IMG/VR virus record: IMGVR_UViG_3300018080_008436
Location: 412,249-476,248 of that record
DNA: 64,000 nt
Strand: one strand, 5' to 3'
Part shown: piece by piece, positions 331 through 42,853 of the stretch
Numbering within the stretch: the stretch's first letter is position 1
How the letters are laid out: the number at the start of each line of letters is the position of its first letter
Notes under the pieces: model-generated
Seen by the model: the letters and a program-made list of their open reading frames with translations, nothing else
Databases searched by the model: none
Told to the model about the DNA's origin: nothing
Position numbers and translations under genes: made by a program

Positions 331-409
331 AAGTAGAATTTGCATACCCTTTTGTGCATTATACATATTTTCAGGGTATAATTTAGTAAACCGCATAGGA
401 GAACAGACA

Positions 410-1121: not shown

Positions 1122-1128
1122 GGGTAAT

Positions 1129-5475: not shown

Positions 5476-5511
5476 AATATCAATATCCTCTAAAAACTAA
5501 TTGATGTTTAA

Positions 5512-5536
5512 TTCCAATTAAGGTAGTAATAATCCT
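5512..5536 (-). promoter_or_regulatory. AGG-N19-GAA putative phage late promoter
   Basis: AGG attattactaccttaattg GAATTA on the minus strand; same spacing recurs at 16 other sites. Confidence 0.7.
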
Positions 5537-5537
5537 T

Positions 5538-6488: not shown

Positions 6489-6504
6489 AGAATCTCCTAA
6501 AAAC

Positions 6505-6912: not shown

Positions 6913-6915
6913 TAT

Positions 6916-7197
6916 TTACTCCTCAACATTAGCAACATCTTTTTCAGATGGTGCTTGGCCATGTTCCAGATGCATTTTCATTGCATCACGTAGCTTGAAT
7001 TTATCTGTATATCTAACAGTAATTACTCCACCTGGATAAATGAGGTCCCAGCAGATTTCACCATCACAATCTTTATTCCTAATCATCCCTCCAGCATCAC
7101 GCCATCTGTCGATTAGTTCTTCCATTTCTCTTCTAAAAACAAAGACATCATTCTCTCTTTGTAAAAATGGCATCGCTATTTTAATAATCTTCATCAA
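6916..7197 (-). CDS. hypothetical protein with MKIIKIA leader
   Basis: 93-aa ORF; promoter motif at 7230-7254. Confidence 0.65.
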   Translation of the reverse strand: MMKIIKIAMPFLQRENDVFVFRREMEELIDRWRDAGGMIRNKDCDGEICWDLIYPGGVITVRYTDKFKLRDAMKMHLEHGQAPSEKDVANVEE

Positions 7198-7229
7198 ATA
7201 TCCCCAAATGAATTGCTTATTCTAATTTA

Positions 7230-7254
7230 TTCTTCAATATCAACCATCTAACCT
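7230..7254 (-). promoter_or_regulatory. AGG-N19-GAA putative late promoter
   Basis: AGG ttagatggttgatattgaa GAATAA. Confidence 0.65.
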
Positions 7255-7264
7255 TCATTAACAC

Positions 7265-7291
7265 AAAAAAAGCCCCTTGATTTCAAGGGGC
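7265..7291 (-). terminator. rho-independent terminator
   Basis: GCCCCTTG/CAAGGGGC stem followed by a U-tract on the minus strand. Confidence 0.8.
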
Positions 7292-7371
7292 AGAAATAAT
7301 GCTCTGTCATTCAGGGAAGCAAAAATAATGCCTTATTCCCAAACAGCATCCATAAGTTCATATATTTATTT

Positions 7372-7947
7372 TTATTTATTCTCGCAGACATCTATTAACT
7401 CATAGATTAAATCTTTTTGATCATCTGTGAATTTCCATCGGACATTAACATTTTTGTCTGCCCAGTCTTTTGCGCTATTACCTTTCTCTTGCCCCATACT
7501 GACCCAATCAGCCACCATTTCAGCTATGTCAATGTCCCCCATCTTAGTGCCATCAATCATTTTTTCGGGTGGTTTGTCTCTATCATTTCTGTTGATGAGA
7601 TCGACCGTTTCAGATGAATGAAACTCTGGATGATGCCTATTACTTTTTACATGATGCTCAGTAGCTTTATTCATCTTTTCATCCATCCCATCTGGCGGTT
7701 CCCAGTCTACACCATCATCTTTGCATTTATAACTCCATGTTACATAAAGATATGGTTCATACTCTGGATCTTCAAATTTACTATCGTCATGATGACTGGC
7801 CTGTTCGATAAGGTCTTCGAATTTGTCATCGTAGTCAGCAATCTTTTTGCAGTATTTCTGAACTCGCTTGATATGTTCTCTAGTTCTTTTTTCAAAGAAC
7901 TCTTCTATTTCTTTCTTCTCACTTTTCGCTGTCCTGATTAATTTCAT
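7372..7947 (-). CDS. HD-like phosphohydrolase (DUF5662-like) with MKLIRTA leader
   Basis: RTREHI..V, HHDDSKF, HHVKSNRHHPEFH and EMVADW motifs; start 7947 after GGAGG. Confidence 0.65.
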   Translation of the reverse strand: MKLIRTAKSEKKEIEEFFEKRTREHIKRVQKYCKKIADYDDKFEDLIEQASHHDDSKFEDPEYEPYLYVTWSYKCKDDGVDWEPPDGMDEKMNKATEHHVKSNRHHPEFHSSETVDLINRNDRDKPPEKMIDGTKMGDIDIAEMVADWVSMGQEKGNSAKDWADKNVNVRWKFTDDQKDLIYELIDVCENK

Positions 7948-7965
7948 TGTAATACCTCCATGATT

Positions 7966-8001
7966 ATTATACAAAAAACCCCTTGTAGAGACAAGGGGTT
8001 T
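7966..8001 (-). promoter_or_regulatory. terminator hairpin with an embedded sigma70-type promoter (TTGTCT-17-TATAAT)
   Basis: AACCCCTTGT/ACAAGGGGTT stem plus U-tract; -35 at 7989-7994, -10 at 7966-7971. Confidence 0.7.
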
Positions 8002-8018
8002 AGATGTACACAGAAAGC

Positions 8019-8333
8019 TTATTTTTCTGGTTTGGGTTGTGGAGGTTGGGGTCTGCCTTTTCCATGGCCTCTCATGCCTTTTCCAGGGCCATTACCATGT
8101 CTTCCCCTCATGCCTTCACGATGACGCTTCATCCTTTCTTTCATCATAGCAGTTAACTCTGAACGATCTAACTTACCATCTTTGTCAACGTCAAAGTTTT
8201 CCATGACTCTGTCCAATACCTTTTCCAAACACTTCTCTGGACTTGGACGTTCAGGGCGTTCGGGTCTCTCGGTTTCTTGGGCTGAAAGAGTGCAGGCAAA
8301 AACTAGGGCGAGTAATACGATTAATGCTTTCAT
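8019..8333 (-). CDS. secreted EF-hand protein
   Basis: Signal peptide MKALIVLLALVFACTLSA; EF-hand loop FDVDKDGKLDRSEL; Gly/Pro/Arg-rich tail; start 8333 after AAGGAG. Confidence 0.75.
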   Translation of the reverse strand: MKALIVLLALVFACTLSAQETERPERPERPSPEKCLEKVLDRVMENFDVDKDGKLDRSELTAMMKERMKRHREGMRGRHGNGPGKGMRGHGKGRPQPPQPKPEK

Positions 8334-17300: not shown

Positions 17301-17460
17301 CAGCTTTGGTTGATGCTTCTTTAGTTTCTTTCTTCTCTTCTTTTTCTTCGCATTCTTCATCCTCTTCGTCACACTCTTCTTCTCCAGCGACAGCTTGCTT
17401 CAGAGCATTTCTAAGTTCGTCCTTAACGTTAACTTTTGCTACTGTAGAGGCTTCAGCAGT
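14371..17460 (-). CDS. C-terminal scaffold/core part of the prohead protease-scaffold protein (Zn-ribbons, internal repeats); reached by a -1 shift
   Basis: Frame is open 72 codons upstream of the TTG at 17244, up to ~17463, with no ATG/GTG; many CxxC pairs; repeated VEAGVPR...EGADNID units. Confidence 0.7.
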   Translation of the reverse strand, partial: TAEASTVAKVNVKDELRNALKQAVAGEEECDEEDEECEEKEEKKETKEASTKAVVKNEKAKRDAEREEILASLESRKRVQAQEEILNPEKLDGADIVIETDFEELGSQKTSATFKKDIVKFAKGALATENMKLASITNVTIDGNTIQIAVQTDAGEESVEIPIGEEVAPIEEEIVPEGDLVGEGIEDGLDADIEMENLNQVAYNNKKMKRTAQSPMGGGMPGAAGEVAAPGAPEEGLDAPPMGEDPALQALTTGNEDELEDEIPTVGEKQAPWSICPECGSSDVDVTKEDDGGIIGNCQNCGAEYEALIKKEIEFRIIKPTKSVGEEGMEDVEGPEEPEEMPALPVAAQTRIDKDSIVRIAANREAHGDVCPACGNKKCDVIASGDGRTKCECGQCGTSFEKNLIVSSKNPSNGLLRVEWDLSPDNSCPECKEEARKFASKLKVVGMLKTAQANADTFPTANCVERIARTYGGNTVARFGPCKDKPLAECVCKELKRLGFTKVRQMKKLADTLMQVDPMDECIEDQKSKGHDVVQATSICNCIKKKFAKEESDNIYVQAFADEAKEGKIALSQYDLATMNELFIQKEENLAKKAQAILEEVEIGDDLEPLDSVDVEVDEIIEEPEEVAVESVTITGDNLEVVENTGDEALEEDIAEDVAFEAEEVPEGEDMETFDTDALAEALAMNSSRVRRSGAESNIKLAGKPKLIKTIEKDVEAGVPRSKATMMNEGADNIDVPMAKPQVPRSNATMGHEGADNINPPAGLPDVAVDSSYMGIEKATQSDMPAINNEIKGTVIAEAEKNLKEAQRQLALAKKMKEVDTVEGDVEAGVPRADASLGHEGADNIDVKMANPDVPRAKATMGQEGPDNIDVNAPKPDVPIDNAYMGVEKETQSDMPGINDKYLKQVQQKREEQLARIKEARKEEALRTASWLAANNRIASDKSTFDNVVTALAQFEVDKIASVAETMFPVKAVKTASTEQQVKTAGTGLPAIVIQSQPAQEPSFQDKIAGAFTIGSKLLNDNLIDNDQR

Positions 17461-19940
17461 TTTTCATCAACTTTCTTACTGATACTCTGTTCACCAAGTT
17501 CGCCATCTGAGAGAACATCAACAGCATCAATAATAGTATCTGGATTAATAGTGTCATCAGATGCAATTACTCTCAACTTGTTAACAAGACAGTGTTCGAC
17601 TTCAGTTGGGGAAGCAGTTGCAACTTTTACGTTTTTGGCGTTCCAATAGGATGATCGCTTCGAAAAAGAAGCAGATTCAGAAGATTGAGGTTCTTCTAAC
17701 AAAGATCCTGCTAATCTTACACGTTCCTTAGTGGTTGCAACGCAGTTGTTCGCAATTTCTTGCAATTCTTGTGGGGTTGCTCCAGTTTCAAGGGAAACCT
17801 CTGCAAACGCTTCAACGACAGCATCCATGTGTTCCTTAGCGGACTTAAATAGAGATGCATCTCTGTTGGCCTGACGTGCCCATGCAGGATCGACATTGTC
17901 TAACTGCTTCTGGGTGATTACTTCAGGCTCATTGTTGGTACGATAGCCTTCACTATCCAATTGTTTTTGGGTGACAGTATGTTTGTCCTCATCCTTACGG
18001 GGAGATACACCATTACTATCATTATCCAATTGTTTTTGGGTAATGACTTCAGGTTCGTCATCCTGTCTGGGGTTCAGCTTCAACTCGCTGTCATCCAACT
18101 GTTTCTCAGTGATAACTTCTTTTTCACCTTTTCTTGGACTCGCGTTATCATTGCTGTCCAGTTGTTTTTGTGTGATGACCTGCTGTTCTTCCCCAGTGCG
18201 ACCGTGATACAACTCGGATCTGTGATCTTCGAGTTGTTTCTGAGTGATCACTTCTGGAGTTGCAAGAACGGTATTGGCACCAGCCTCTTTAGTTTCTTTA
18301 CTCATTCTTTCTACTCCTTCTCTTGGATTTGTTTTGGCGAATAAATCTAAAAATTGATGAGCCGCTACTTTTGGCGACTCACTGATTAAATTCTTATCTT
18401 GATCTGACAGATCGTCATAGGTCCAAATTTGCATTCTGTCAGAGTTAGTGTCCTCCGCGACGATGATAAATGAATCGTCTCTATTTTTCACTGCGAGTTT
18501 TAAATTACCAATTTGCATTGATGGTACTTCTTTTATATACTCAAAAAAGCTTTGTTTTTCCTGCCACGAGTCAGATAAAACTTGCATAGCTTTTTCACGT
18601 TGTTTTTCTTTACTAGCTACGGTTCGTCTTTTTCCCATAGATTTAACTCCCGTTTTATTCATTTTATCGCACAGACTCGCGGCCTTTTGCAAAACAGAAG
18701 CTCCGAACTCATAATGATCTACGGCCTCATCTGCGACTCTCCTAATTAAATGTGAACTCTGGGCGGCTGGACGCATAGGTGCGGTAATAGGCATCTGCGG
18801 TGTATTTACTGGAGGTTGCCCTGGCGCTCCAGTTGTCGTTCCAACTTCCATCGCTTGTTCTGAAGCAACTGGCATTGGTGCGGCATCTCTTGGAGCCGTT
18901 TCCAATCCCCCTCCTGGTGTTGGTGGTACTTCCCCTGTTGGAGGCATACCTTCTTCTGGAGCGTTACCCTCGGTTCCAGGAACCTGAGATTCAACACTTC
19001 CATATCCAGCCCCTACTAATTCATCTGACCAAGTTTGTAGACTAGCAATAATATCTACTAAATCACTTGCAAATTCAACTTCAACTTGTTGTCGGTTCTT
19101 AATCAAGTTAACAGCAATGTTCTCTAATGTTTCAAGAACCTGATTAATCTGATCAATTTCTTCCTGACTTGCATTTTTCTCAAGTGCCGCAGTCTTAATC
19201 ATTCTAAGGTAATTCTCAACATTGGCAACTCTTGCAAGATAATCATCGTTTGGAATTATACCTTCAATATGGCAACTTGGGCAAGCAGGATCAACAACTC
19301 CACTTAACTCAATAAACTTGATCCCATAATTATGTTCAAATACTGGTTCGTCTTTGAATTCCTTCACTTCGCCAGTTCTAACGTTTCTGGCCCTACCAGT
19401 AAATTTTCTGCTCTTTCTATTTCTAATATGTTCGCAGTAATCTTCAGTTCTCTCAGCTTTGTTTTCGCAAATACTGCAAGTACTGTATTCAACTGAAGCA
19501 CCCATGGAGACTCCAGTCATATATCCTTGTTCAATACCGCGACAAATATGAGGATAAGCATCTCTATCTACAAAAGCTATTGTATAAACAGCATTATCAT
19601 CTTCGTTCCATTCGGCCCAGATGATCTTACCTTTAGCCTTTTCTATATCTTGATTTTCATGATTGGTAAAGAAAGGGACACCTTCGAAACTCTTATAAGC
19701 TTTAAGCAATTCTTCTTTCGAAAATGAATCACCATTACTATTAGGTTCGTCAGCTTTGATTGCTTTAGCCCTGAAAAATAAAGCATTTGGATGCTTTGTA
19801 ATTTCTGCTTGAACAATCTTTTCTTTCTCTGAACCAGGCTCTATCAAAACTCTGCCAGAGGCAGTTTTAATCATAACCTCGTCTTCCTTAGAAATTTGCT
19901 CTACAGGACAAGGTTCGGTTAAAGCAACTTTTATTAACAT
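17439..19940 (-). CDS. prohead (maturation) protease with scaffold extension
   Basis: NSNGDSF...FFTNH...AKGKI...GVSMGASVEYSTCSIC...CEHI...FIELSGVVDPA, typical of HK97-type prohead serine proteases; located between portal and MCP. Confidence 0.8.
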   Translation of the reverse strand: MLIKVALTEPCPVEQISKEDEVMIKTASGRVLIEPGSEKEKIVQAEITKHPNALFFRAKAIKADEPNSNGDSFSKEELLKAYKSFEGVPFFTNHENQDIEKAKGKIIWAEWNEDDNAVYTIAFVDRDAYPHICRGIEQGYMTGVSMGASVEYSTCSICENKAERTEDYCEHIRNRKSRKFTGRARNVRTGEVKEFKDEPVFEHNYGIKFIELSGVVDPACPSCHIEGIIPNDDYLARVANVENYLRMIKTAALEKNASQEEIDQINQVLETLENIAVNLIKNRQQVEVEFASDLVDIIASLQTWSDELVGAGYGSVESQVPGTEGNAPEEGMPPTGEVPPTPGGGLETAPRDAAPMPVASEQAMEVGTTTGAPGQPPVNTPQMPITAPMRPAAQSSHLIRRVADEAVDHYEFGASVLQKAASLCDKMNKTGVKSMGKRRTVASKEKQREKAMQVLSDSWQEKQSFFEYIKEVPSMQIGNLKLAVKNRDDSFIIVAEDTNSDRMQIWTYDDLSDQDKNLISESPKVAAHQFLDLFAKTNPREGVERMSKETKEAGANTVLATPEVITQKQLEDHRSELYHGRTGEEQQVITQKQLDSNDNASPRKGEKEVITEKQLDDSELKLNPRQDDEPEVITQKQLDNDSNGVSPRKDEDKHTVTQKQLDSEGYRTNNEPEVITQKQLDNVDPAWARQANRDASLFKSAKEHMDAVVEAFAEVSLETGATPQELQEIANNCVATTKERVRLAGSLLEEPQSSESASFSKRSSYWNAKNVKVATASPTEVEHCLVNKLRVIASDDTINPDTIIDAVDVLSDGELGEQSISKKVDEKLLKPLQ
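17895..18260 (-). repeat. six degenerate (E/Q)VITQKQL protein repeats in the scaffold
   Basis: EVITQKQLEDHR, QVITQKQLDSN, EVITEKQLDDS, EVITQKQLDND, TVTQKQLDSE, EVITQKQLDNV. Confidence 0.85.
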
Positions 19941-19941
19941 A

Positions 19942-22900
19942 TTATCTTCCTTTTCTAAGATTCTTCGAGAACTTCTTTGCTAACCTTAAGAGTTCTAAAG
20001 ATTCATGTGATTTTCCTTCATTGTCCAATTCTTGGGACAACTTTATGATGTTTTTAAGAGCGTCAGTCGATGCCTGTGGGCCATCATCATCGTCATCATC
20101 CACATCAAAATCTTCTTGAAGACCATCAAGAAGTCCAGGCAATGCAGGTGTTGCAGGTTGTTTTGCAGGAGGTTGCTCCCTTCTTTCCCCAGGTTGTTCT
20201 ACGACATCGACTTCTCTGTCAATAACAACCTCTGGCAAATCAGGTGTTACTTCTTCAGGACCTTCAGGACCTTCAGGAACAACCTCTTCAGCGCCATCAC
20301 CAACATCATTTATTTCGAAATCTTCTTGATCCAACAAATCTCCTTCATCAAGTACCTGTTCAAGCTCAAGTGCAACCTGATCCAACATATCTTGATCAAC
20401 ATCATGAACTCCTCTCATATAAGCGAGGTCTTCTGTGTTAATTCTAATCATTGCTTCGTCACCATATATCTCTTCGAAATATTTTCTCATGGTTTCATCA
20501 CTTCTGATTGTTCTGTATAACTTTCTTTGAGCAGGTGTTCTGGCATAGAATTCATATGCCAATTGATTTGAAGTTACATTGTCTGCTGGAGGTCTCTGGA
20601 ATACCAACGCAATTCTTTGAATATTCTTGTCCCCATTCTCATCCATAGATATCAGTGGAGTCTTGGTCCCTGGATCTGTAAGTCTCGTTCCTTTCTCAAC
20701 AAACTCAAAAGCCATTGTTTCAGTTATTTCTCCAACATCAAGAAATGCATCTAACAAACTATTATGAACTCCAAATTGACTCATTTCTTGTTTATCTTCA
20801 TCCCAAACAATACTAACAGCATTGCCAACATCTTCATCGGCACCTTTCTTTGTTCTCTTGCCATCAATTTGTTTTTGTCGTCTATAAACCTTTTCCATTT
20901 CATGAGCATAACTTCTTGCTTTCTTGGCTATGTCTTTTATTTCAGAATCAATTTGAATTTGTTCCCCATTTTCCCCTTCTTCAACATATGGTCTAAATGG
21001 CTCCAATTCTTTTATTTGTAAAGGTACATCTAATTGCCTTGCTCGAATAGCCCTTGTCATCATTGCTCTAACCTGACTTGGGAGAAACTTATTGGCATGT
21101 CCATTCTCATTAAGGAAGATTCGGCCCCTTTCTACAGAATCTTTATCTATCTGTTCTCTGGTGGTAATATTGTTCTCACCCATGAACTCAGCCAAAGTGT
21201 CTAAAGCATTTTTCTTATCGAAGAATTGCAATACTTTCTCCATAGGAGTTCTAACTGTATTCTCATTAAAGCATCTTGGGAAACCATTGGCATCCAAAAA
21301 TCGGACTACAGTTTCGGCAGTACCTTGACCAACATGAGCAAAGTTATTTGCCTCCATACACTCAGCAACCTTCTTTTTAACAACTCTGTCCAAAACTTTA
21401 ATCATTAATGGCTTTACATTACCCTTATTAAATAATGGAGTATAATTGTTAAACTCATCTTTGTGTTTCTTTCTCTTACCCCTACCACTAGCACTTCCAC
21501 CTGGGCCTTTGGGATCTCCACCAGCATTTAAGAAATCAACTACAACTTGCATTGAGTCTTCACTTATCTCTTCTATATTTCTAGAAGCCATAAATTCAGC
21601 AATTTCAGCAATAAGATTCTTCTCATTCTTCACATTTGATTTAATCTGAAGGGCTGAGTTTCTTAAAGCGCTACTAGGTTTAATGAATGCATGAGTCTCA
21701 CTCATTCTTTTGAAGTTCTTTCGCATAACATCAATACTTAATAACTTATCAATGTCTTCTTCTGCCAATTCTCTCTCTTCTTCTGTAGAGTCAGGGTCGC
21801 TAATAATATCTTTGCGGTTTTTGATTTTTTCTTCAATTATGTTTTCATAGAAAGCAAATATATGAGTGACTAACTTATTAAAGATTCTGTTCCCACTATA
21901 TCCATTAAGAGCGCCATCTTTAGAGAAGTTAAAGTTATCTAGGTTAAGAACTCCACCATTAGTAACCTGTTGTCTTGGATCTGGGTTATCTGCCTGTCGT
22001 TGACCTTCTTCCCATTCGTTCAGAGCTTCCTGCCTATCTTCAGAAACGCCACCAATTCCAGTTAGGAAATTAACAAATGTTCTAAAATCACTTGTAAAAT
22101 CAAACCCTGCTTGACCTGCTTGAGGGATTCCCCCAAGAAGTCTGTATCGGTATCTCTCTCCACCAGTTATATTTTGATCTTGGAGATAGGATCTCACATA
22201 ATGTAAAAGATCTTCATTGTATTGTTTGAACTCTTCCATTCCCATCATGTTAGCCAAAAGTTTCCTTAAACCATTTCTATTTAAGAACATTCTTGTTCCA
22301 TTTGGAGAAATGATCATGTTATTCTCAGCGGCTTGATTGTAATTAGCGAAAGAATAGATCTGACAATCAGGATCATTCATATAATTTGCGGGTAAAGTAG
22401 AATCTCTTTTAAGAAGACGATTGTCTACCATAGGACCAACAGCTTTTTTCTGGAAGAATCTTGGACCTTCTGTCTTCTTATCAAGATTATAAATAGTTCT
22501 ATAGTTAAAGATGTAGGAATAGTCATCCAATCCGAACTTCTGAATAAGAGGTGATGGACTCTCGGGATTGGTTAAGCTTTCCACTTGTTGTTCCTGAGTA
22601 ACATGATCTTCTCCTAGATCTTGGAACATATCAAGTTTATGAATTTTGAGATTCTTTTCTAATTCTTCATTCTCTCTGTTTGGAGCAGGGACTGGATAGG
22701 ATCTATGGAATGCTTGGAATTTCCCAAATGCGTCTGCGTAATACAAACCTGCTAGGTTAAGAACTTGATCTCCTTGTATCTTTTTCCCTCTAACTTTTGC
22801 AAATGCGGCATCCTTAGCTTTTCTTTTAGCCACTTCATCGGCGGCTTCCTGATCTTCATGTTTTGGATTTCTACGTTCTTCTTCTTGAATGTTTGGCAAT

Positions 22901-23859
22901 AACATTTGATAGAAGTGATCTTGAACCATCCCTTGAATTTGTCCAGATGACTTTTTGAGAAGTTGTATGATTGTTCCCATAGGGATATCTTCCCCATTTT
23001 CTGCATGGGGGTACATTCCCATAATACGCAATGCGTCACACAATCTACCGTTATCCTCTGGGGCCATTAAATAAGGCCCAACATAAATAGCATGAAGACC
23101 ATGATGTTTACTAAATCCGACATAAGTCTTAAAAATCTTTCTCATTTCTGCGGCACCAGCAGGATCAACTAATTCATCATCTTGACCCTCTTTCGCATCT
23201 CCATATCCATACTTTCTTTTATAGTATGCATATCTCTTCCTCTTCTCATCTTTGATGTCTTGTAATGCGCCTTCGAATGACGGGTTGTCTGCTATAAACT
23301 CTTTCAAGTCATCAGCTTCGTCTAGCATAATCGCTTCATATGGAACCCAAATATAATCGACTCTGTATCTAAGAGCGTCTGCGCCCATAGCTTCTTTAAT
23401 AATTACATCGATATTGAACGATTCTAGTTTCTTTTCTCTCTCTTCTTCCCTCTCTTCCTTTTTCTCTCTCTTGGCTTTCCAATCATTCACTTTCTGAGAA
23501 AGTCCATGGAGTTGTTTTGAGGTATAAGGTTTCAAGCTACTGGGGGTGGGGACTCCCCAAGTTTCTTTAGCATATTTAGCGGCTGAGTCTAAACTGTCGA
23601 AATATTTTCCACCAGCAGAGTAAGTAGCGGGTAGCTTTCTTACGCCTGCGAAGAATTTAGCTCTAGGAGCGTGTACTTTAGCTGGTCCAATAATACAATA
23701 GTATCCGTCACCATTTGGGGCTTGCCCTTCAAAACGGAAATAACTGCCTGGACCGACAACATCTTCAAACTGATCTTTGAGAAATTGGGTTTTATCAGTA
23801 TATTTCTCGCCCCACTTGATGTTTTTCTCAACGAGTTTTTCTTTGGATTCTTTGCGCAT
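19942..23859 (-). CDS. large hypothetical head-associated protein (1305 aa)
   Basis: Lies between portal and protease; AGG-N19-GAA at 23904-23928; internal IIKEA motif; acidic tail ending in a helix NIIKLSQELDNEGK. Confidence 0.7.
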   Translation of the reverse strand: MRKESKEKLVEKNIKWGEKYTDKTQFLKDQFEDVVGPGSYFRFEGQAPNGDGYYCIIGPAKVHAPRAKFFAGVRKLPATYSAGGKYFDSLDSAAKYAKETWGVPTPSSLKPYTSKQLHGLSQKVNDWKAKREKKEEREEEREKKLESFNIDVIIKEAMGADALRYRVDYIWVPYEAIMLDEADDLKEFIADNPSFEGALQDIKDEKRKRYAYYKRKYGYGDAKEGQDDELVDPAGAAEMRKIFKTYVGFSKHHGLHAIYVGPYLMAPEDNGRLCDALRIMGMYPHAENGEDIPMGTIIQLLKKSSGQIQGMVQDHFYQMLLPNIQEEERRNPKHEDQEAADEVAKRKAKDAAFAKVRGKKIQGDQVLNLAGLYYADAFGKFQAFHRSYPVPAPNRENEELEKNLKIHKLDMFQDLGEDHVTQEQQVESLTNPESPSPLIQKFGLDDYSYIFNYRTIYNLDKKTEGPRFFQKKAVGPMVDNRLLKRDSTLPANYMNDPDCQIYSFANYNQAAENNMIISPNGTRMFLNRNGLRKLLANMMGMEEFKQYNEDLLHYVRSYLQDQNITGGERYRYRLLGGIPQAGQAGFDFTSDFRTFVNFLTGIGGVSEDRQEALNEWEEGQRQADNPDPRQQVTNGGVLNLDNFNFSKDGALNGYSGNRIFNKLVTHIFAFYENIIEEKIKNRKDIISDPDSTEEERELAEEDIDKLLSIDVMRKNFKRMSETHAFIKPSSALRNSALQIKSNVKNEKNLIAEIAEFMASRNIEEISEDSMQVVVDFLNAGGDPKGPGGSASGRGKRKKHKDEFNNYTPLFNKGNVKPLMIKVLDRVVKKKVAECMEANNFAHVGQGTAETVVRFLDANGFPRCFNENTVRTPMEKVLQFFDKKNALDTLAEFMGENNITTREQIDKDSVERGRIFLNENGHANKFLPSQVRAMMTRAIRARQLDVPLQIKELEPFRPYVEEGENGEQIQIDSEIKDIAKKARSYAHEMEKVYRRQKQIDGKRTKKGADEDVGNAVSIVWDEDKQEMSQFGVHNSLLDAFLDVGEITETMAFEFVEKGTRLTDPGTKTPLISMDENGDKNIQRIALVFQRPPADNVTSNQLAYEFYARTPAQRKLYRTIRSDETMRKYFEEIYGDEAMIRINTEDLAYMRGVHDVDQDMLDQVALELEQVLDEGDLLDQEDFEINDVGDGAEEVVPEGPEGPEEVTPDLPEVVIDREVDVVEQPGERREQPPAKQPATPALPGLLDGLQEDFDVDDDDDDGPQASTDALKNIIKLSQELDNEGKSHESLELLRLAKKFSKNLRKGR

Positions 23860-23945: not shown

Positions 23946-26168
23946 TTACTCTTTTGGTGCTTGATTTTGAATAGCCATTTCCTTTTTCATAATTGTCTGC
24001 ACAATTTTACTCATTGCCTGCTGTGGCTGTTTCTCTATCTCACTATCTTTAAACCTTAAAACAGTCCAGCCCATCTGGGCAAGTTGCCTATCTCTTTCTT
24101 GGTCTTTTTGAATCTGTTTTGGAGAATTGTGAAAAATCTCTCCATCTGCTTCAATAATAAGTCTCAAATGAGGGAGGGCAAAGTCTACAGGATGTTCCAT
24201 ATTTCCTATCATAATCTTATACTGAGGGATAATAGGATATTTAATAATCCCGTCTTTTTGATGTTGAACCATATGATCCATCAATTCTCTTTCAATTTTT
24301 GTAAAAGCGATTCTCCCCTTCTCATCTCTTACCTGTCCATCTTTCCCTTGCGAATAGGAAGATGGTTTTGCGGTCTCTGAACGCATTTTCTTTTGCTCAG
24401 AAACTAATTTATCTCTGGTTTTCTTTTTCAAAACCTTTCCGCCAAATTGTGATGGATCAGCAACTTCCGCAGTCAATGGCCCTGTTTTTGCCAATACGGG
24501 TTCTCCACCTGTTGGTGCGGCTGGCGCTCCACCGAGATCTCCTCCTGGCTCAATAGGGGGTTCTCCCCCCATACCTCCCATTCCACCTCCAAGATCCATG
24601 CCTCCTGGCATTCCGCCGAAGCCACCACCCATGTCTCCTCCAGGCTGTTGCCCCATACCTTGTCCAAGGGCCATCATTTGAACGGCATCATAGCGTTTTC
24701 TTTCAATTTCTTGATCTGGGTCAATATCAAATGCTTCAAGAACAGTCTGCGCACTAACAAGACCCTTCTCGTACAATTGAATAATAAATGTTCTGTATTG
24801 CTGTTGATCTCTAAGATGCATGGAGTTCCATTTAATCTTAGGAACCAGATACTCTTCTTCTCCCGTCTCAGGATTTGTATCAATAAACCCTTGTCGTTTA
24901 GCTTCTGGGAGATATAGGAAATCTGTTATCCAATCAGCTATTTGACTTCTAAATGTGTCCAACCTGTGAATCATAGCTTCAATACCAACAGAAGCGCTTG
25001 CAAATGTTGGACCTTCACCATTAAGAAGAGCATTGTTAATCATCATACCATCAAGGACTTCCTGATTGATGAATTCAAACTCATTACTAAGAGTAAGAAC
25101 TTTGCCAGAAGCACCCACCCAGTCAAAATCAAATGCATGGTGTGTGACAATGGTAAGGTTAGGGTCATTAGCAGTTTCGGCAAGCTGTGCTTGTACAGCG
25201 GCAATATCGGCAGGTCCAGCAGGACGTTCATCACTACCGACTTTAACAATCTTAATAGGAACGATTAGACGTTCTGCAACGATCCACTGAGCTACCATGA
25301 GCTTAGTTTTATATGAAAGTATAGGGAATAATCTACGGACCATTCCGATTCCATAACGAGTATATCCACTTTCACCATATTTCAAGTGAGAAACGTTACG
25401 ATTATCTAATCGGATAGGCTGACCTGACGAAACAAGTGCGATTACATCTGGAGAAAGTTTCTCATATCCAGGTGTTTTTCTCTGGACCATATTGATGAGT
25501 TCTTCATCTGGTTTCAAAGCGATAATCGGGTCAGGATTTAAAGGTGGGGTATAGACATCTACAAAGTCAGGGTTAAGGATGACCATTCTTCTGACCGTTC
25601 CTCCCTCATGATCGCAAATAATATCTCCGACCATTCCAGAGCCTCCACAATGCTCACAATGGATTTCTGCAAATGGGAAGCAATCGCCAAGCAAATGGAC
25701 TTCATGACTTATCAAACGACACCATTTAGTCAGTTCGAGTCTTTTTTTGAATTTATCAAAGTATAACTTAATCTCTCTATCTTTACACTCATGTTCCCAA
25801 TCACTCATTGGAAAATAACTGTAGAAATCAATTGCAGAAGCTACCTTGGGTTCGTTTTCATAGAAGAATCTTGCCCATTGATATTGTTCTATTCTTTTAC
25901 TTGGGATCTGCCAGTTGATTGGAGTATGAACTGGGGAGAAAAATTGAGGCTGACCATAAATAGTTCCTGCACTTGCTACGGAACTAAATTTCGCCATACC
26001 ATTTCCCCATTGGGTACTGGCACCAGTCGTTGGGGCATAGTTTTGTCTTGGGATAGGTCGATATGATTGGTGCTGTGGAACCTCGCTGGTAGCGAGTTTA
26101 GCGGGATCTCTATTTCTTAATGCTCTAAAAGTCTCTTCTAGATTGGTAGTTTGTAGGTGAACTTGCAT
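23946..26168 (-). CDS. portal protein with C-terminal DUF559/Vsr-like endonuclease domain
   Basis: WARFFYENEPKVASAIDFYS, HLLGDCFPF, YGIGMVRR, IVPIKIVKVG portal-like core; Gly/Met/Pro linker; then PVDFALP..RLIIEADGEIFH...KDQERDRQL..GWTVLRF. Confidence 0.8.
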   Translation of the reverse strand: MQVHLQTTNLEETFRALRNRDPAKLATSEVPQHQSYRPIPRQNYAPTTGASTQWGNGMAKFSSVASAGTIYGQPQFFSPVHTPINWQIPSKRIEQYQWARFFYENEPKVASAIDFYSYFPMSDWEHECKDREIKLYFDKFKKRLELTKWCRLISHEVHLLGDCFPFAEIHCEHCGGSGMVGDIICDHEGGTVRRMVILNPDFVDVYTPPLNPDPIIALKPDEELINMVQRKTPGYEKLSPDVIALVSSGQPIRLDNRNVSHLKYGESGYTRYGIGMVRRLFPILSYKTKLMVAQWIVAERLIVPIKIVKVGSDERPAGPADIAAVQAQLAETANDPNLTIVTHHAFDFDWVGASGKVLTLSNEFEFINQEVLDGMMINNALLNGEGPTFASASVGIEAMIHRLDTFRSQIADWITDFLYLPEAKRQGFIDTNPETGEEEYLVPKIKWNSMHLRDQQQYRTFIIQLYEKGLVSAQTVLEAFDIDPDQEIERKRYDAVQMMALGQGMGQQPGGDMGGGFGGMPGGMDLGGGMGGMGGEPPIEPGGDLGGAPAAPTGGEPVLAKTGPLTAEVADPSQFGGKVLKKKTRDKLVSEQKKMRSETAKPSSYSQGKDGQVRDEKGRIAFTKIERELMDHMVQHQKDGIIKYPIIPQYKIMIGNMEHPVDFALPHLRLIIEADGEIFHNSPKQIQKDQERDRQLAQMGWTVLRFKDSEIEKQPQQAMSKIVQTIMKKEMAIQNQAPKE

Positions 26169-26209
26169 GCACACATTCCTGATTTAGATTTTTTTTATTA
26201 TACAAAATC

Positions 26210-40200: not shown

Positions 40201-42036
40201 CTAAAATCTCATCCTAACAGTTACAGGTTCTGGAAGAGCAGGGTTCAGTCCATCAGTAGCAGAAGAAACAGCCCCTACTAAGCAATCAACTACATCATCT
40301 GTCTTCACATCTGCATTTTTATCTGGCAGAAGAGAAATTCCTCTTGCAATTCTTTTGAATTTTAAGTGTTGCATCTCTGCTAACATATATGAAGCATGTC
40401 CATCATCATCATAAAGATAAATTTCAGGATTTGGTTGATACTCCATCATCATCTTCATATTTCTATATAATTTCTGTTTAACACTTCTGTTATATTGAAT
40501 CTTTTGACAATTTACTCCATGACTCCTCAAAAACTGCAAACTGTGTACAGACTGAAAGTCATCATAAGTAACTCTCAATGGTCTAAAGATTTTGCAAATA
40601 GTTAGAACATCTCTATCAATCTCATGGAATTGTAATCCAATACCTGGAACTGGTTTCCAGATCCATACGCCAGCTAATTCAACCATCCATCTCTTTTCCC
40701 CCTGATTGTTTCTATATTTCTTAGCGGCAATCAAAACCATACTGAAGTTATTTCCGCCATTGGCTGGATCAACATGAGCATAATAATTGTATCCTGGTGC
40801 TGGTTTGGCATGAGGGCCAAGATCTGCCCTTACACATCTTTCAAGCAATCCTTCCTCAAAATAGTTACCATAAATACCGCCACTAGCCCATTGAGCGCCA
40901 TACTCAATAGCAAACATTTCTGGGTTACTCTCTCTATCACCAACCATCTCTTTGTTATAAAAATCAATATCATCATTTACACACCAAGTTGGCAACTGAA
41001 ACGATAAGATAGAATCATCTTCTAATGATCTTCGATACATATCATAGAAAATACCCATCCTATTGTTCGGTGATGATATCATCACTATTCGAGCCGCATT
41101 ATATTTGTAGAATTTAGATAATGATGGCTTTAATCTGTTGAAGAAATAGGTCCCTGTTACCTTACCACTCTCATCATAGAATGCAATCTCGTCAAACAGA
41201 ATAAGAATAGCACTATATCCAGCAAGTGAGTCTGGATTACTATGACCACAAAGAAGTAGAATAGATCCCGCAACTTCAATGTCAACTCCCTGACTTTTCT
41301 TTTCTAAGTCAGAGTCAGTATACAAACGAATCTCCGAAGAAATTGATTTAGCGATTCGTCCTTTGAAAAAAGGAGAGTTTCTAATTCTAGCCTGAATCTG
41401 TCCAAACAAACGTCCAGCCTGAGATTGTGACAAGGCAACATTAATAATTGCAATTTCATCATCACTAGGTAGATTATAGTAGCTATGGGGATTACCCTCA
41501 TTAATAACTAGTAACTTGTACGCTTCATACACAGTTATGATTGAAGCCATCAAGGTTTTACTTCCACGTCTACCTAAGACAAGATGCAACATACTAAAAT
41601 ATTCAGGTCGTCTGTCTTCTGGCTTCTTCCCCTCATTTTCATCATTCCCCTTGGCCTTCTCATCGTGGAACCTGTCCATCTCGATCATTTTTTTGATAAC
41701 CTCTTTGATGTTCCTTTCATAAGTAACACCTTCAAGAGTCTCATCTTCTTCATTACCGTAAAGCCACTCCCACTCTTCTTTATTGAGATGAAGGTCTTCA
41801 TTTCCTATAGTGTTCTTGTAGAAGCACTTAAGGATAACTCTTTGGGAAGTCCAGAGATCAAGCTGATTCTCTTCTGATGGTAAGTTTAGGTAGTCTGGAT
41901 GATCACAAAACGTTATGATATCGACTATCTCTTTGTAACCCTTGTTCTTTTTCAGAATCGGGTTTTTGGTATTAATCTGAAGTATTGCTTCTTCAAGTGG
42001 ATTAATAGCTTTCTGCTTCTTCTGGCGACTCGACAT
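40201..42036 (-). CDS. terL: terminase large subunit
   Basis: Walker A GRRGSKT, Walker B ILFDEIAF, motif III ISSP, EYGAQW, RNase H-like HVDPA and C-terminal DDVVD. Confidence 0.9.
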   Translation of the reverse strand: MSSRQKKQKAINPLEEAILQINTKNPILKKNKGYKEIVDIITFCDHPDYLNLPSEENQLDLWTSQRVILKCFYKNTIGNEDLHLNKEEWEWLYGNEEDETLEGVTYERNIKEVIKKMIEMDRFHDEKAKGNDENEGKKPEDRRPEYFSMLHLVLGRRGSKTLMASIITVYEAYKLLVINEGNPHSYYNLPSDDEIAIINVALSQSQAGRLFGQIQARIRNSPFFKGRIAKSISSEIRLYTDSDLEKKSQGVDIEVAGSILLLCGHSNPDSLAGYSAILILFDEIAFYDESGKVTGTYFFNRLKPSLSKFYKYNAARIVMISSPNNRMGIFYDMYRRSLEDDSILSFQLPTWCVNDDIDFYNKEMVGDRESNPEMFAIEYGAQWASGGIYGNYFEEGLLERCVRADLGPHAKPAPGYNYYAHVDPANGGNNFSMVLIAAKKYRNNQGEKRWMVELAGVWIWKPVPGIGLQFHEIDRDVLTICKIFRPLRVTYDDFQSVHSLQFLRSHGVNCQKIQYNRSVKQKLYRNMKMMMEYQPNPEIYLYDDDGHASYMLAEMQHLKFKRIARGISLLPDKNADVKTDDVVDCLVGAVSSATDGLNPALPEPVTVRMRF

Positions 42037-42853
42037 AATATTCCTCCAATATATAAACACAACCATTGTCTGATGGACAAAAGGTCAGAATTTTATTTCC
42101 AACCTTATATATTTCAAACAAATGAGTCGCATCTCCTTCAGAGGAAAGCATATGCACAGTATTGTCACTTAAAAAGAAAAGTTTGTTCTTGACATAATAT
42201 ATGTCTTTTAGGTCTTTGCAGTCATCGATAATTGTGTACGTTGAGTTTTTTCGTATCCCCCTTAAGCAATTGTTACCACTGTCTGCAAAACAGACAGTTT
42301 TTCCCATTATTGCAACTCCAGTTGGTTTAGAAATCCTCGTATTTTTTAAATTTGATATTGAGAATCCAGCCTTACCACAACCTATAAGTGGAAAGGCGTT
42401 CTCCTCATTCATTATAAAGCATCTGTGACAATTTGTAGTGCTCCAGATGACTTGATTTTCTAATGAAGTTACATAAGTCCTTGAGTCGCTTCTTCCAAGG
42501 ACTTTTCTTCTAAATTGTTTAGCACTGTTTTTTGAGATCAAATTCTCAAAATCCATCAACTCCAAATCGACTTTGTGAATTCGGCTACCACCTTCTGAAA
42601 CTATATATAAACAATCATAACTGGAATTATAGCATATCGAACTGAAAGTTGAAAAGTCTGGCTTCTCAGTATATGTGAGTTCATAACGCCAATCAGGATT
42701 GCAGTCGCCATTATTCATCTTTCCTATGCCATCATCATGTAGGAAAAACAGATTATCCCCAACACAACAAAAATCCTTGATCTCGAAGTTGATCTCGAAA
42801 TTTCGTTGTTTTCGGGTGGTAAGGTTCTTTTCTGTAAGTTTATAGATCATCAA
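42002..42853 (-). CDS. NHL-repeat/beta-propeller-like protein
   Basis: KPTGVAI...FADSGNNCLR NHL-like repeat. Confidence 0.55.
   Translation of the reverse strand: MMIYKLTEKNLTTRKQRNFEINFEIKDFCCVGDNLFFLHDDGIGKMNNGDCNPDWRYELTYTEKPDFSTFSSICYNSSYDCLYIVSEGGSRIHKVDLELMDFENLISKNSAKQFRRKVLGRSDSRTYVTSLENQVIWSTTNCHRCFIMNEENAFPLIGCGKAGFSISNLKNTRISKPTGVAIMGKTVCFADSGNNCLRGIRKNSTYTIIDDCKDLKDIYYVKNKLFFLSDNTVHMLSSEGDATHLFEIYKVGNKILTFCPSDNGCVYILEEYYVESPEEAESY

What the first reader, a model, noticed from the sequence alone, without database searches (positions are those of the whole stretch)
23946..24330. Portal protein fused to a DUF559/Vsr-like endonuclease
Seen: after the portal core and a Gly/Met/Pro linker comes a domain with the DF...IEADG..FH...DxxRDxxL...GWTVLRF signature. 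No intein C...HN boundaries flank it. Portals are not normally nuclease fusions. Inference: a nuclease ring at the packaging vertex (nick or branch resolution), a cleaved and ejected nuclease, or a domesticated homing endonuclease.
Basis: partly seen in the sequence, partly recalled or inferred. Interest (0 to 1): 0.65.

Follow-up and report, generated by a model that had tools for sequence, protein, structure and literature searches.

The report
Megaphage portal with built-in nuclease
The portal protein of this roughly 0.48-Mb phage, and of every complete relative found in a large uncultivated clade related to Bacillus phage G, ends in a conserved and apparently active Vsr/DUF559-type DNA nuclease on a long flexible tether, so twelve nuclease copies should sit inside each capsid next to the DNA channel, an arrangement I could not find described.

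Summary
ORF 23946..26174 (-) encodes a portal core (36% identical to phage G gp14), a Gly/Ala/Pro/Met-rich tether, and a C-terminal DUF559 / Vsr-like PD-(D/E)xK domain (Pfam 5.6e-13). Its AlphaFold model best matches the I-Bth0305I catalytic domain, NGO0050 and Vsr.

It is not a misassembly. Every complete homologue with a core at least 47% identical carries the module in the same frame (118 of 120 proteins; about 72 IMG/VR loci). Phage G and two close relatives have the disordered tail but no nuclease.

All six catalytic positions are invariant. dN/dS of the module (0.007) equals that of the core. Core and module co-diverge (Spearman 0.90). In some relatives a classical intein splits the catalytic ExDG motif. 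No free-standing close relative was found, and no fusion in 50,697 deposited phage genomes.

Because the portal C-terminus (crown) faces the capsid interior, I infer a fixed, domesticated nuclease enclosed in the capsid and tethered to the portal. Its substrate is unknown.

Leading options are cargo or a gate nuclease, packaging-linked DNA processing (RuvC is detected only in phage G), or a competition or homing nuclease. TerL's own nuclease looks intact. I rate it a new variant of a known kind, of moderately high interest.

The parts
23946..26174 (-). Portal-nuclease gene: 742 aa from GTG 26174, more likely 740 aa from ATG 26168; stop codon at 23946..23948
   Evidence: ORF list and translation. 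The database copy P0002 is 740 aa, and homologues start M..IQTTNLE. Coordinates.
24657..25982 (-). Portal core (aa 65-506: clip, stem, wing, crown). The last helices (aa ~458-506) form the crown.
   Evidence: phrog_16240 1.7e-47. 36% identity to phage G gp14. AF2 model pLDDT 76; Foldseek top hits are solved portals (P7-1, HK97, lambda, T4, G20c).
25608..25658 (-). Cys/His-rich insert (C-x2-C ... C-x-H, aa 173-189) in the portal core; it looks like a zinc ribbon. It is absent from phage G, and in relatives its second Cys is an intein insertion point.
   Evidence: Gap opposite this stretch in the phage G alignment. P0050 reads ...CEN|C(intein)...N|CGGSG. Coordinates. Metal binding was not tested.
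24468..24656 (-). Disordered Gly/Ala/Pro/Met-rich tether (aa 507-569)
   Evidence: Between the crown end and the FGGK motif, 85 homologues have 73-191 residues (median 88): G 35%, A 12%, P 10%, M 9%. dN/dS is 0.10, against 0.006 for the core. The end of the core model has low pLDDT.
24315..24467 (-). Conserved ADPSQ-FGGKVLKKKTR motif, basic helix and short hairpin preceding the nuclease (aa 570-620)
   Evidence: G12, G13, L16 and K17 are nearly invariant and R21 is invariant in alignment A1. AF2 models helices at residues 8-11 and 18-35 with pLDDT ~83. Phage G keeps ADPSSFGFPGKG in its nuclease-less tail.
23970..24314 (-). DUF559 / Vsr-like PD-(D/E)xK nuclease domain (aa 621-735). Predicted catalytic residues: E628, D664, E675, D677, H682, D691.
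   Evidence: PF04480 5.6e-13 and PF18741. PDB profile hits 3hrl (1.4e-10) and 3r3p (3.9e-5). AF2 pLDDT 85.7. Foldseek hits 3r3p, 3hrl, 4oq2, 1vsr. The residues are invariant in 60 sequences and were mapped to Vsr and I-Bth0305I through PMC3239194.
40201..42066 (-). Large terminase (context). Its own C-terminal nuclease motifs are intact.
   Evidence: phrog_2 5.3e-28. The profile of three TerLs hits the nuclease domains of G20c and P74-26 TerL (5m1f, 5tge, ~2e-4). HVDPA and TDDxVD are invariant.
17439..19940 (-). 833-aa protein with an N-terminal head-maturation-protease domain (context), two genes downstream of the portal
   Evidence: phrog_18299 'head maturation protease' 1.9e-19, aa 63-220.

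Best explanation
What it is (largely shown). Each portal subunit of this ~476-kb phage carries at its extreme C-terminus a compact ~165-residue module. The module is a basic helix plus a complete DUF559 / Vsr-like PD-(D/E)xK domain, joined to the portal crown by a 73-191-residue Gly-rich disordered tether. The module was added once to a pre-existing disordered portal tail, after the split from the phage G lineage. It has since been inherited vertically under strong purifying selection, without a single detected loss.

How it most likely works (inferred). The crown end of every solved portal faces the capsid lumen, so portal assembly automatically encloses twelve tethered nuclease modules around the inner mouth of the DNA channel. 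The portal tail therefore acts as a built-in loading and positioning device for a metal-dependent DNA endonuclease. Its chemistry should be Vsr-like: Asp/Glu metal ligands and a His general base.

I think it most likely serves as an encapsidated DNase. It would act either on DNA at the inner mouth of the channel or, after release by the co-encoded head maturation protease, as cargo that leaves with the genome. It would stay harmless to the packaged genome through specificity or lack of cofactor, as staphylococcal nuclease does when artificially packaged in T4.

I put active, domesticated and enclosed in the capsid at about 0.8. I put the cargo or gate role at about 0.4.
For: Fusion and fold.

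Universal, in-frame retention. 118 of 120 best homologues (51-100% identity) carry PF04480 and the ExDGxx[FY]H motif; the two exceptions look cut short (P0091 lies on a 1.9-kb contig, P0049 ends just after the FGGK motif). Among 77 clade loci in IMG/VR, no complete portal ORF lacks the module. Only phage G, L076 and L077 (35% identical core) lack it. ESM Atlas holds viral 'DUF559 + Portal_Mu' clusters of 52 and 524 members.

Catalytic competence. E628, D664, E675, D677, H682 and D691 are invariant. They correspond to Vsr E25, D51, the F62 position, H64, H69 and D97, and to I-Bth0305I E170, D196, N208, H213 and D222.

Selection and vertical descent. dN/dS is 0.007 for the module, 0.006 for the core and 0.10 for the linker. 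Core and module identities correlate at Spearman 0.90 over 561 pairs.

The active site is a conserved target. A classical C1...HN/C+1 intein is inserted between E and xDG in L050, L057, L068 and L075.

Contrast with selfish elements. Inteins in the same gene are sporadic, 0-4 per gene at five or more sites; the nuclease is fixed.

No free-standing close relatives. The word search found four short proteins. In the best 150 representatives, 76 carry the portal core and 74 are short pieces, with the module at or near the C-terminus. All four short pieces I looked up lie at contig starts.

Topology. The tether starts right after the crown helices of a canonical portal fold. C-terminal GFP fusions of T4 gp20 lie within the capsid and are tolerated, and packaged staphylococcal nuclease coexists with DNA in viable T4 (PMC3012670).

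Plausibility of release and cargo. A head maturation protease domain lies two genes away. Giant-phage proteases process portals (PMC5694885). Phage G virions contain many nucleic-acid enzymes (PMC12484599). Portal-bound MuF proteins often carry C-terminal nuclease toxins (PMC5576092).
Against: No biochemical, proteomic or structural data exist for any member, so activity, location and any cleavage are all inferred. No conserved protease motif was found in the tether. The only conserved tether motif (ADPSxFG) is also present in phage G, which has no nuclease.

The module has no recognisable sequence-specific DNA-binding domain, so how the packaged genome is spared is unexplained. There is no immunity-like small ORF next to the gene (86-bp gap to the next gene).

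A tethered domain cannot reach the host, so delivery requires an unproven cleavage. dN/dS rests on only 6 unsaturated pairs. The complementary RuvC pattern points towards the packaging or recombination rival instead.
Confidence: 0.45

Rival explanations
1. Packaging- or recombination-linked DNA processing. The portal-borne nuclease is the clade's debranching or end-trimming enzyme, a covalent version of T4 endonuclease VII (gp49) recruited by portal gp20, or of the T4 gp4 head-completion nuclease. It would replace a stand-alone Holliday-junction resolvase.
For: RuvC (PF02075) is found in phage G (7.7e-23). It is not found in six near-complete fusion-bearing genomes or in three partial fusion-bearing records. 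RusA, RecU and Hjc are not detected, and Phage_endo_I only below threshold. Endonuclease_7 occurs only in G002. The portal copy is the only DUF559 in G001-G004, and phage G has none. T4 gp49 associates with the portal dodecamer (PMC3012670). T4 gp4 is a REase-fold nuclease needed for head completion (PMC7824862).
Against: The module hangs from the crown, inside the capsid. Branches stall outside, at the terminase, with the channel filled by DNA, so only unassembled portal could act as a resolvase. The non-fusion side of the phyletic pattern is a single complete genome. Most genes of these phages are unannotated, so an unrecognised resolvase may exist. No DUF559 or Vsr-type enzyme is known to me as a junction resolvase (own knowledge). 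TerL keeps its own nuclease.
Confidence: 0.2
2. A selfish or competition nuclease. A free-standing EDxHD/DUF559 homing endonuclease gene landed at the 3' end of the portal gene and became fused in frame. It acts in the cytoplasm on the genomes of co-infecting relatives (marker exclusion or gene conversion), and its tethering to the portal is incidental.
For: The nearest solved fold is the homing endonuclease I-Bth0305I. The portal gene of this clade is a hotspot for selfish elements, with 0-4 inteins per gene. The same genome has a free-standing HTH + DUF559 gene. The module diverges faster than the core at long range: 32% against 51% identity.
Against: There is no presence/absence polymorphism, unlike the inteins in the same gene. 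No separate-ORF version turned up among the full-length genes examined. Module and core co-diverge strictly (Spearman 0.90), and dN/dS is as low as in the core. The module has no NUMOD or HTH target-recognition domain. The portal module is only 31% identical over 68 aa to the genome's free-standing copy.
Confidence: 0.15
3. A non-catalytic DNA-binding appendage. The nuclease fold is used only to hold DNA, for example anchoring the first-packaged end or sensing headful, in the way RAP/FASTK Vsr-like domains bind RNA.
For: Vsr-like folds are used for binding in mitoribosomal and RAP proteins (hits; weak RAP match). A conserved basic helix precedes the domain. Phage G already has a long portal tail, so the tail itself has some role.
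Against: All six catalytic positions, including the His general base, are invariant across cores that have diverged to ~47-50% identity. An intein targets the ExDG motif, as inteins typically target active sites (own knowledge).
Confidence: 0.08
4. An artefact: misassembly, a frameshift error, or a read-through of two genes.
For: The linker is a GGN-rich low-complexity stretch, where assemblers and sequencers can slip.
Against: The same architecture occurs in hundreds of independent assemblies from JGI, ENA, NCBI and Logan, with linkers of different length and sequence, always in frame.
Confidence: 0.01

Closest known systems
Bacillus phage G portal gp14 (Donellivirus gee)
   Same: It has a homologous portal core (36% identity over aa 65-493). 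Its C-terminal tail is also long and disordered and contains the ADPSxFG motif. It is a virion protein confirmed by proteomics and cryo-EM (PMC12484599).
   Different: It has no nuclease domain (no PF04480 hit) and no Cys/His insert. Phage G encodes a RuvC-like resolvase that the fusion-bearing genomes lack.
I-Bth0305I (EDxHD homing endonuclease of Bacillus phage 0305phi8-36), catalytic domain, PDB 3r3p
   Same: It is the best structural match (Foldseek 6e-5; profile 3.9e-5). The Vsr-derived active-site residues are shared.
   Different: I-Bth0305I is encoded in a group I intron, has an N-terminal NUMOD/HTH recognition region, and is sporadically distributed. The portal module has no such region and is fixed at the end of an essential structural gene.
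DUF559 proteins (PF04480; e.g. NGO0050, PDB 3hrl) and E. coli Vsr (1vsr)
   Same: The module belongs to the same family by HMM, and the same fold is the best sequence-profile hit in the PDB (3hrl, 1.4e-10). The catalytic constellation is the same.
   Different: Those are small stand-alone or wHTH-fused bacterial proteins (AbiEi + DUF559). Vsr nicks at T:G mismatches and binds zinc. The module does not hit the Vsr family model PF03852.
T4 endonuclease VII (gp49) bound to portal gp20, and the T4 gp4 head-completion nuclease
   Same: They set a functional precedent for a nuclease working at the portal vertex during head filling or completion (PMC3012670; PMC7824862).
   Different: They are separate proteins with other folds (His-Me finger; TnsA-like) and act on the outside of the head. 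Here the nuclease is covalently fused and predicted to be inside.
MuF polymorphic toxins (SPP1 gp7-like minor capsid proteins with C-terminal toxin domains)
   Same: A protein enclosed in the capsid and associated with the portal carries a C-terminal nuclease, and is proposed to be delivered with the DNA (PMC5576092).
   Different: The carrier there is MuF, not the portal, at 1-2 copies per capsid. Its toxin domains are polymorphic and come with immunity genes. Here one nuclease family is fixed at 12 copies, and no immunity ORF is seen.
Engineered T4: gp20 C-terminal GFP fusions, and CTS-targeted staphylococcal nuclease
   Same: They show that bulky C-terminal portal fusions end up inside the capsid, and that a nuclease can be co-packaged with the genome in viable phage (PMC3012670).
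   Different: Those are artificial, and only about half of the portal positions tolerate a fusion. Here the fusion is natural and is presumably present on all twelve subunits.

Membership tests
Tailed-phage portal protein | Sequence homology to established portal families | tested here: met
   phrog_16240 'portal protein' 1.7e-47 plus three more portal PHROGs. 36% identity, E 2e-88, to phage G gp14.
Tailed-phage portal protein | Canonical portal fold (clip, stem, wing, crown) | tested here: met
   The AF2 model (pLDDT 76) matches solved portals of P7-1, HK97, lambda, T4 and G20c, with Foldseek E from 9e-10 to 1e-6 and TM ~0.5.
Tailed-phage portal protein | Dodecamer at a unique capsid vertex | not testable with these tools
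   This needs cryo-EM or biochemistry. The gene lies in a head module with a maturation protease and TerL.
DUF559 (PF04480) / Vsr-like PD-(D/E)xK nucleases | Family HMM above the curated cut-off | tested here: met
   49.1 bits against 20.6 for the whole protein; 53.2 bits for the C-terminal 143 aa. PF18741 scores 41.8 against 38.2.
DUF559 (PF04480) / Vsr-like PD-(D/E)xK nucleases | Restriction-endonuclease-like fold | tested here: met
   AF2 pLDDT 85.7. Foldseek hits 3r3p, 3hrl, 4oq2, 1vsr.
DUF559 (PF04480) / Vsr-like PD-(D/E)xK nucleases | Catalytic residues (Vsr E25, D51, H64 position, H69, D97, plus the acidic residue at the F62 position) | tested here: met
   E628, D664, D677, H682, D691 and E675 are invariant in 60 aligned modules. 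ExDGxx[FY]H is present in 118 of 120 homologues. The mapping is from PMC3239194.
DUF559 (PF04480) / Vsr-like PD-(D/E)xK nucleases | Nuclease activity | not testable with these tools
   This requires expression and an assay.
EDxHD homing endonucleases (I-Bth0305I type) | Vsr-like catalytic domain with the composite E-D-x-H-D residues | tested here: met
   The position of I-Bth N208 / Vsr H64 is Asp here.
EDxHD homing endonucleases (I-Bth0305I type) | N-terminal NUMOD/HTH target-recognition region | tested here: not met
   No such domain hits the protein. The nuclease is preceded by a low-complexity tether and one basic helix.
EDxHD homing endonucleases (I-Bth0305I type) | Residence in an intron, an intein or a free-standing mobile ORF, with sporadic distribution | tested here: not met
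   It is fixed in frame at the 3' end of the portal gene in all complete clade members and co-diverges with the core.
Vsr mismatch endonuclease (PF03852) | Match to the Vsr family model | tested here: not met
   PF03852 is not listed for this protein at E <= 1. Only a fold-level match to 1vsr, E 1.3e-3.
Intein | Hint/splicing domain with C/S1 ... HN / C,S,T+1 boundaries around the insert | tested here: not met
   No intein family hits the window's portal, and the nuclease is terminal. Relatives do carry inteins, including one inside the nuclease.
MuF polymorphic toxins | MuF domain carrier with polymorphic C-terminal toxins and an adjacent immunity gene | tested here: not met
   No MuF family hit. 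One and the same nuclease family occurs in all members. An 86-bp gap separates it from the next gene, and no ORF of 60 aa or more lies wholly within it.

The most novel reading that the evidence does not exclude
The twelve tethered nucleases form a self/non-self gate at the inner mouth of the portal channel. They would cut DNA entering the phage's proheads that does not belong there: genomes of co-infecting related megaphages, satellites, or host DNA. That would stop competitors from using the phage's very costly capsids, while the phage's own genome is spared through sequence or modification.

This would explain several observations at once: the fixed tethering on the inner side, the twelve copies, the universal retention, the fast divergence of non-catalytic surfaces combined with frozen catalytic residues, and the lack of an immunity gene. 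Nothing tested here excludes it, and nothing tests it directly.
Probability: 0.08. Interest if true: 0.9.

Novelty: new variant of a known kind. Interest (0 to 1): 0.68.

Why it matters
Portals are among the best-studied parts of tailed phages and are regarded as passive or sensor rings. A whole clade of ~0.25-0.5-Mb phages that builds an enzyme into every portal subunit would be a new functional class of portal.

It would also be a natural counterpart of the engineered T4 portal fusions and packaged nucleases. It gives a concrete, clonable handle (a ~170-residue module) on the biology of uncultivated megaphages.

It raises a sharp question that experiments can answer: what does a nuclease do inside a capsid full of DNA? 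The answer bears on genome packaging quality control, protein delivery with the genome, and competition between phages.

The intein lodged in the nuclease active site, and up to four further inteins in the same gene, make this locus a striking example of layered selfish elements in an essential structural gene. The architecture is already common in databases, but only under automatic names such as 'very-short-patch-repair endonuclease', which hide the fact that these proteins are portals.

Tried and rejected
- Misassembly or read-through: rejected, because the fusion is conserved in frame in hundreds of independent assemblies.
- Separate translation of the nuclease from an internal start: rejected. 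The Met residues in the pre-domain of the window protein are not conserved in homologues.
- The portal nuclease replacing a missing terminase nuclease: rejected. Terminase_6N and Terminase_6C models found nothing in the genome. However, the divergent TerL at 40201..42066 matches phrog_2. It is conserved in relatives, and its profile hits solved TerL nuclease domains with the Asp motifs intact. A single-sequence PDB search with TerL gave nothing.
- Free-standing close relatives of the module: not found. The four short hits and the short representatives are contig-edge fragments where I checked them.
- A group of 14 short representatives with a longer pre-domain looked like a possible stand-alone family. 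They start with Gly/Pro-rich stretches, and the two I looked up begin at contig starts, so they are most likely fragments of a further portal subclade.
- Fusion in deposited phage genomes: none. tblastn with the whole protein and with the module alone and megablast of 10 kb gave no match.
- Literature: 8 full-text searches found no description of a portal-DUF559 fusion. The library is open-access only.
- A conserved protease cleavage motif in the tether (A-x-E or L-x-E type): none conserved, by eye.
- The Pox_A22 resolvase search is uninformative, because its control stayed silent.
Full report
**The observation**

The window is the last 64 kb of a 476,248-bp IMG/VR virus record that CheckV rates 98% complete. 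On the minus strand an uninterrupted ORF runs 23946..26174. It is 742 aa from a GTG. Homologues and the database copy P0002 indicate the ATG at 26168, giving 740 aa.

The protein has four parts:
- Residues ~65-506 are a portal core. Evidence is phrog_16240 at 1.7e-47 and 36% identity to Bacillus phage G gp14 over aa 65-493.
- Residues 507-569 are a Gly/Met/Pro-rich low-complexity stretch.
- Residues 570-620 hold a conserved ADPSQ-FGGKVLKKKTR motif and a basic helix.
- Residues 621-735 match Pfam DUF559 (PF04480, 5.6e-13, 49 bits against a cut-off of 20.6) and PF18741.

**Fold**

I built an alignment of 60 C-terminal modules (A1). It gave an AlphaFold2 model with mean pLDDT 85.7 and the strand and helix order expected for a restriction-endonuclease-like domain.

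Foldseek against the PDB ranks four structures first:
- the I-Bth0305I homing-endonuclease catalytic domain (3r3p, 6e-5);
- the DUF559 protein NGO0050 (3hrl);
- the PvuRts1I nuclease domain;
- E. coli Vsr (1vsr).

A sequence profile also finds 3hrl (1.4e-10) and 3r3p (3.9e-5).

**Is the fusion real?**

The word-based protein search returned 498 homologues. The best 120 are 51-100% identical. All carry PF04480 and PF18741 except two that look cut short: P0091 lies on a 1.9-kb contig, and P0049 ends shortly after the FGGK motif. The motif ExDGxx[FY]H is present in 118 of the 120.

A scan of IMG/VR gave 80 loci. I searched their six-frame ORFs with HMMs of the core and of the module:
- Every complete portal ORF whose core is at least 47% identical carries the module in the same ORF.
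- Five loci are cut by the contig end before the module.
- One locus (L083) is a fragmented gene that still has the module.
- Only phage G itself (L074) and two relatives (L076, L077; 35% identity) have complete portals without it.

ESM Atlas holds viral clusters named 'DUF559 / Portal_Mu' with 52 and 524 members. I also ran an exhaustive profile search of 1.84 billion representatives with A1. It lists 150 best hits, with the module at or near the C-terminus. Of these, 76 contain the portal core and 74 are short pieces, mostly with Gly/Pro/Ala/Met-rich N-termini. All four pieces I looked up begin at the first bases of their contigs.

The fusion is therefore not a misassembly. It is the norm in a very diverse clade whose near-complete genomes are 255-498 kb, with contigs up to 525 kb carrying the same protein. 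It is absent from 50,697 deposited phage genomes.

**Evolutionary status**

Phage G's portal tail (aa 494-648) is Pro/Gly-rich low complexity. It keeps the motif ADPSSFGFPGKG but has no nuclease. So the nuclease was appended to a pre-existing disordered tail after the two lineages split.

Selection and descent were measured on 34 distinct intein-free genes:
- In the six pairs with unsaturated synonymous divergence, dN/dS is 0.007 for the module, 0.006 for the core, 0.10 for the tether and 0.078 for the pre-domain.
- Pairwise amino-acid identities of core and module correlate strongly (Spearman 0.90, 561 pairs). That indicates co-divergence rather than domain shuffling.
- The module diverges faster at long range (32% identity where the core is 51%).

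The catalytic set is invariant in A1: E628, D664, E675, D677, H682 and D691. These correspond to Vsr E25, D51, the F62 position, H64, H69 and D97, and to I-Bth0305I E170, D196, N208, H213 and D222 (PMC3239194).

In four IMG/VR loci (L050, L057, L068, L075) a ~390-residue insert sits exactly between the catalytic Glu and the following (C)DG. It begins CLHP..., ends ...HN, and is followed by Cys. This is a classical intein in the nuclease active site. Inteins typically occupy conserved functional sites (own knowledge).

Inteins in this gene are sporadic: 0-4 per gene at five or more sites. The nuclease is fixed. That contrast argues that the nuclease is domesticated rather than currently selfish.

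**Topology**

An AF2 model of the core (pLDDT 76) matches solved portals of Pakpunavirus P7-1, HK97, lambda, T4 and G20c. Its last helices (P0001 ~458-506) are the crown, and the tether starts immediately after them.

In all solved portals the crown faces the capsid interior (established knowledge). C-terminal GFP fusions of T4 gp20 lie within the capsid (PMC3012670). The tether from the crown end to the FGGK motif is 73-191 residues in 85 homologues (median 88; G 35%, A 12%, P 10%, M 9%).

I infer that twelve nuclease modules are enclosed around the inner mouth of the DNA channel. This step is an inference, not an observation.

**Mechanism**

What is shown is an intact, selected nuclease active site, covalent linkage to the crown through a flexible tether, and universal retention. 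The function is inferred.

I favour (about 0.4) an encapsidated DNase for which the portal tail is the loading and positioning device. It would act on DNA at the inner mouth, or leave with the genome after proteolytic release. Four pieces of supporting context apply:
- A head-maturation-protease domain lies two genes downstream (window 17439..19940).
- Giant-phage prohead proteases are known to process portals (PMC5694885).
- Phage G virions contain many nucleic-acid enzymes (PMC12484599).
- Portal-bound MuF proteins often end in nuclease toxins thought to be delivered with the DNA (PMC5576092).

Staphylococcal nuclease packaged in T4 heads is compatible with viable phage until calcium is added (PMC3012670). 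A packaged nuclease is therefore not necessarily suicidal.

Against this model, I found no conserved cleavage motif, no specificity domain and no immunity gene.

**Rivals**

*(a) Packaging-linked debranching or end processing*, like T4 gp49 bound to gp20 or the T4 gp4 nuclease. A lead in its favour is a complementary phyletic pattern:
- RuvC is detected in phage G (7.7e-23). It is not detected in six near-complete fusion-bearing genomes or three partial fusion-bearing records.
- RusA, RecU and Hjc are not detected, and T7-type endonuclease I only below threshold.
- Endonuclease_7 occurs only in G002.
- The portal copy is the only DUF559 in four of the five fusion genomes.

The non-fusion side of this pattern is a single complete genome, and unrecognised resolvases may exist. 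A module inside the capsid also cannot reach junctions stalled outside.

The idea that the module replaces the terminase nuclease is rejected. TerL (40201..42066) is conserved in relatives, and its profile hits solved TerL nuclease domains with the Asp motifs intact.

*(b) A selfish or competition nuclease acting in the cytoplasm.* The homing-endonuclease fold relatives and the selfish-element hotspot support it. Fixation, co-divergence, strong purifying selection and the absence of a recognition domain weaken it.

*(c) A non-catalytic DNA anchor.* The invariant catalytic residues weaken it.

*(d) An artefact.* Excluded.

**Comparison with what is known**

- The protein is a member of the portal family and of the DUF559 / Vsr-like superfamily; the defining features I could test were met.
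- It works like the catalytic domain of EDxHD homing endonucleases. It fails two defining features of that family, the NUMOD/HTH recognition region and mobile, sporadic residence.
- It does not match the Vsr family model.
- It is not an intein.
- It lacks the MuF carrier and the polymorphism of MuF toxins.

Eight full-text searches found no description of a portal-DUF559 fusion. The library is open-access only, so this is not proof of absence. Databases name these proteins 'very-short-patch-repair endonuclease' or 'DUF559 domain-containing protein', which hides that they are portals.

**Verdict**

This is a real, conserved and apparently undescribed portal variant with a built-in nuclease. I rate it a new variant of a known kind. 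Interest is 0.68: the anatomy and evolution are solid, and the function is open but directly testable with a ~170-residue recombinant module.

**Limits**

- There are no experimental data.
- dN/dS rests on six pairs.
- The resolvase survey uses Pfam models only.
- No alternative genetic code was used, and nothing resembling human sequence was met.

Noticed in passing
L050, L057, L068, L075 (IMG/VR relatives; portal ORFs 2642..7000, 3851..8299, 2..4504, 277..5883): A ~390-aa classical intein (CLHP... to ...HN, then Cys) with a LAGLIDADG-like middle splits the nuclease between the catalytic Glu and the (C)DG of the ExDG motif.
   Followed up: partly
Relatives L004-L083 and P0007-P0120; e.g. L078 (open frame of at least 2021 aa, cut by the contig end), L048 (1841 aa): The portal gene of this clade is an intein hotspot, with 0-4 large inserts per gene at five or more distinct core positions plus the nuclease site. 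About a third of homologues carry PF14528, PF14890 or PF05203 domains. The window's own portal has none.
   Followed up: partly
window 25608..25658 (-), aa 173-189 of the portal: A C-x2-C ... C-x-H insert (zinc-ribbon-like) sits in the portal core. It is conserved in the clade and absent from phage G. In P0050 an intein is inserted at its second Cys.
   Followed up: partly
G000:C1:222440..223315 (-) (locus L003 1204..2079), outside the window: The genome has a second DUF559 gene. It is a free-standing 291-aa protein with an N-terminal HTH_23, a DUF559/RAP-like core, C-terminal Cys clusters and an HTH, like a homing endonuclease. It is only 31% identical over 68 aa to the portal module.
   Followed up: partly
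G000-G004, G011 versus G005 (phage G): RuvC resolvase is detected only in phage G. The six near-complete fusion-bearing genomes show no RuvC, and the five of them also screened for RusA, RecU and Hjc (not G011) show none. Endonuclease_7 occurs only in G002. This pattern is complementary to the portal nuclease, but the non-fusion side is one genome.
   Followed up: partly
window 44276..47779 (-): A 1167-aa ribonucleotide reductase (phrog_367 6.6e-97, class II insertion domain) is interrupted by a LAGLIDADG intein (PF14528 4e-22, PF14890 2e-11, aa ~360-680).
   Followed up: no
G003 and G004 (loci L086, L087): The large terminase genes of two relatives sit in open frames of 1005 and 1047 aa with intein-like text (…HEIEATDNHP…), so TerL also carries inteins in this clade. 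The window's TerL (621 aa) does not.
   Followed up: no
window 17439..19940 (-): The head maturation protease domain (aa ~48-220) is the N-terminus of an 833-aa protein. The remaining ~600 residues match nothing.
   Followed up: no
window 19942..23859 (-): A 1305-aa ORF immediately downstream of the portal has no Pfam or PHROG match, and has acidic runs near its C-terminus. A large gene follows the portal in the same way in L092 and L093.
   Followed up: no
window 1108..3135 (+): A 675-aa protein has poly(A) polymerase / CCA-adding head, RNA-binding and HD domains (PF01743 1.3e-25). The window itself has no tRNA genes (ARAGORN).
   Followed up: no
window 47791..49011 (-): A 406-aa ABC/SMC-like ATPase (AAA_21, AAA_15; the Pfam description of AAA_21 mentions AbiEii) lies next to the RNR gene.
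   Followed up: no
L004 (IMGVR_UViG_3300017991_005548, 296,327 bp) versus G000 (476,248 bp): An identical portal core occurs in a second IMG/VR record of very different length. Both are rated 98% complete and both are labelled 'provirus'. The labels and completeness estimates for these megaphage records look unreliable.
   Followed up: no
P0227 (1274 aa, metagenomic representative): A non-portal protein combines Hint/PT-HINT, a Vsr domain, an intein splicing domain and two DUF559 stretches. It is another odd nuclease and intein mosaic among the nearest relatives of the module.
   Followed up: no
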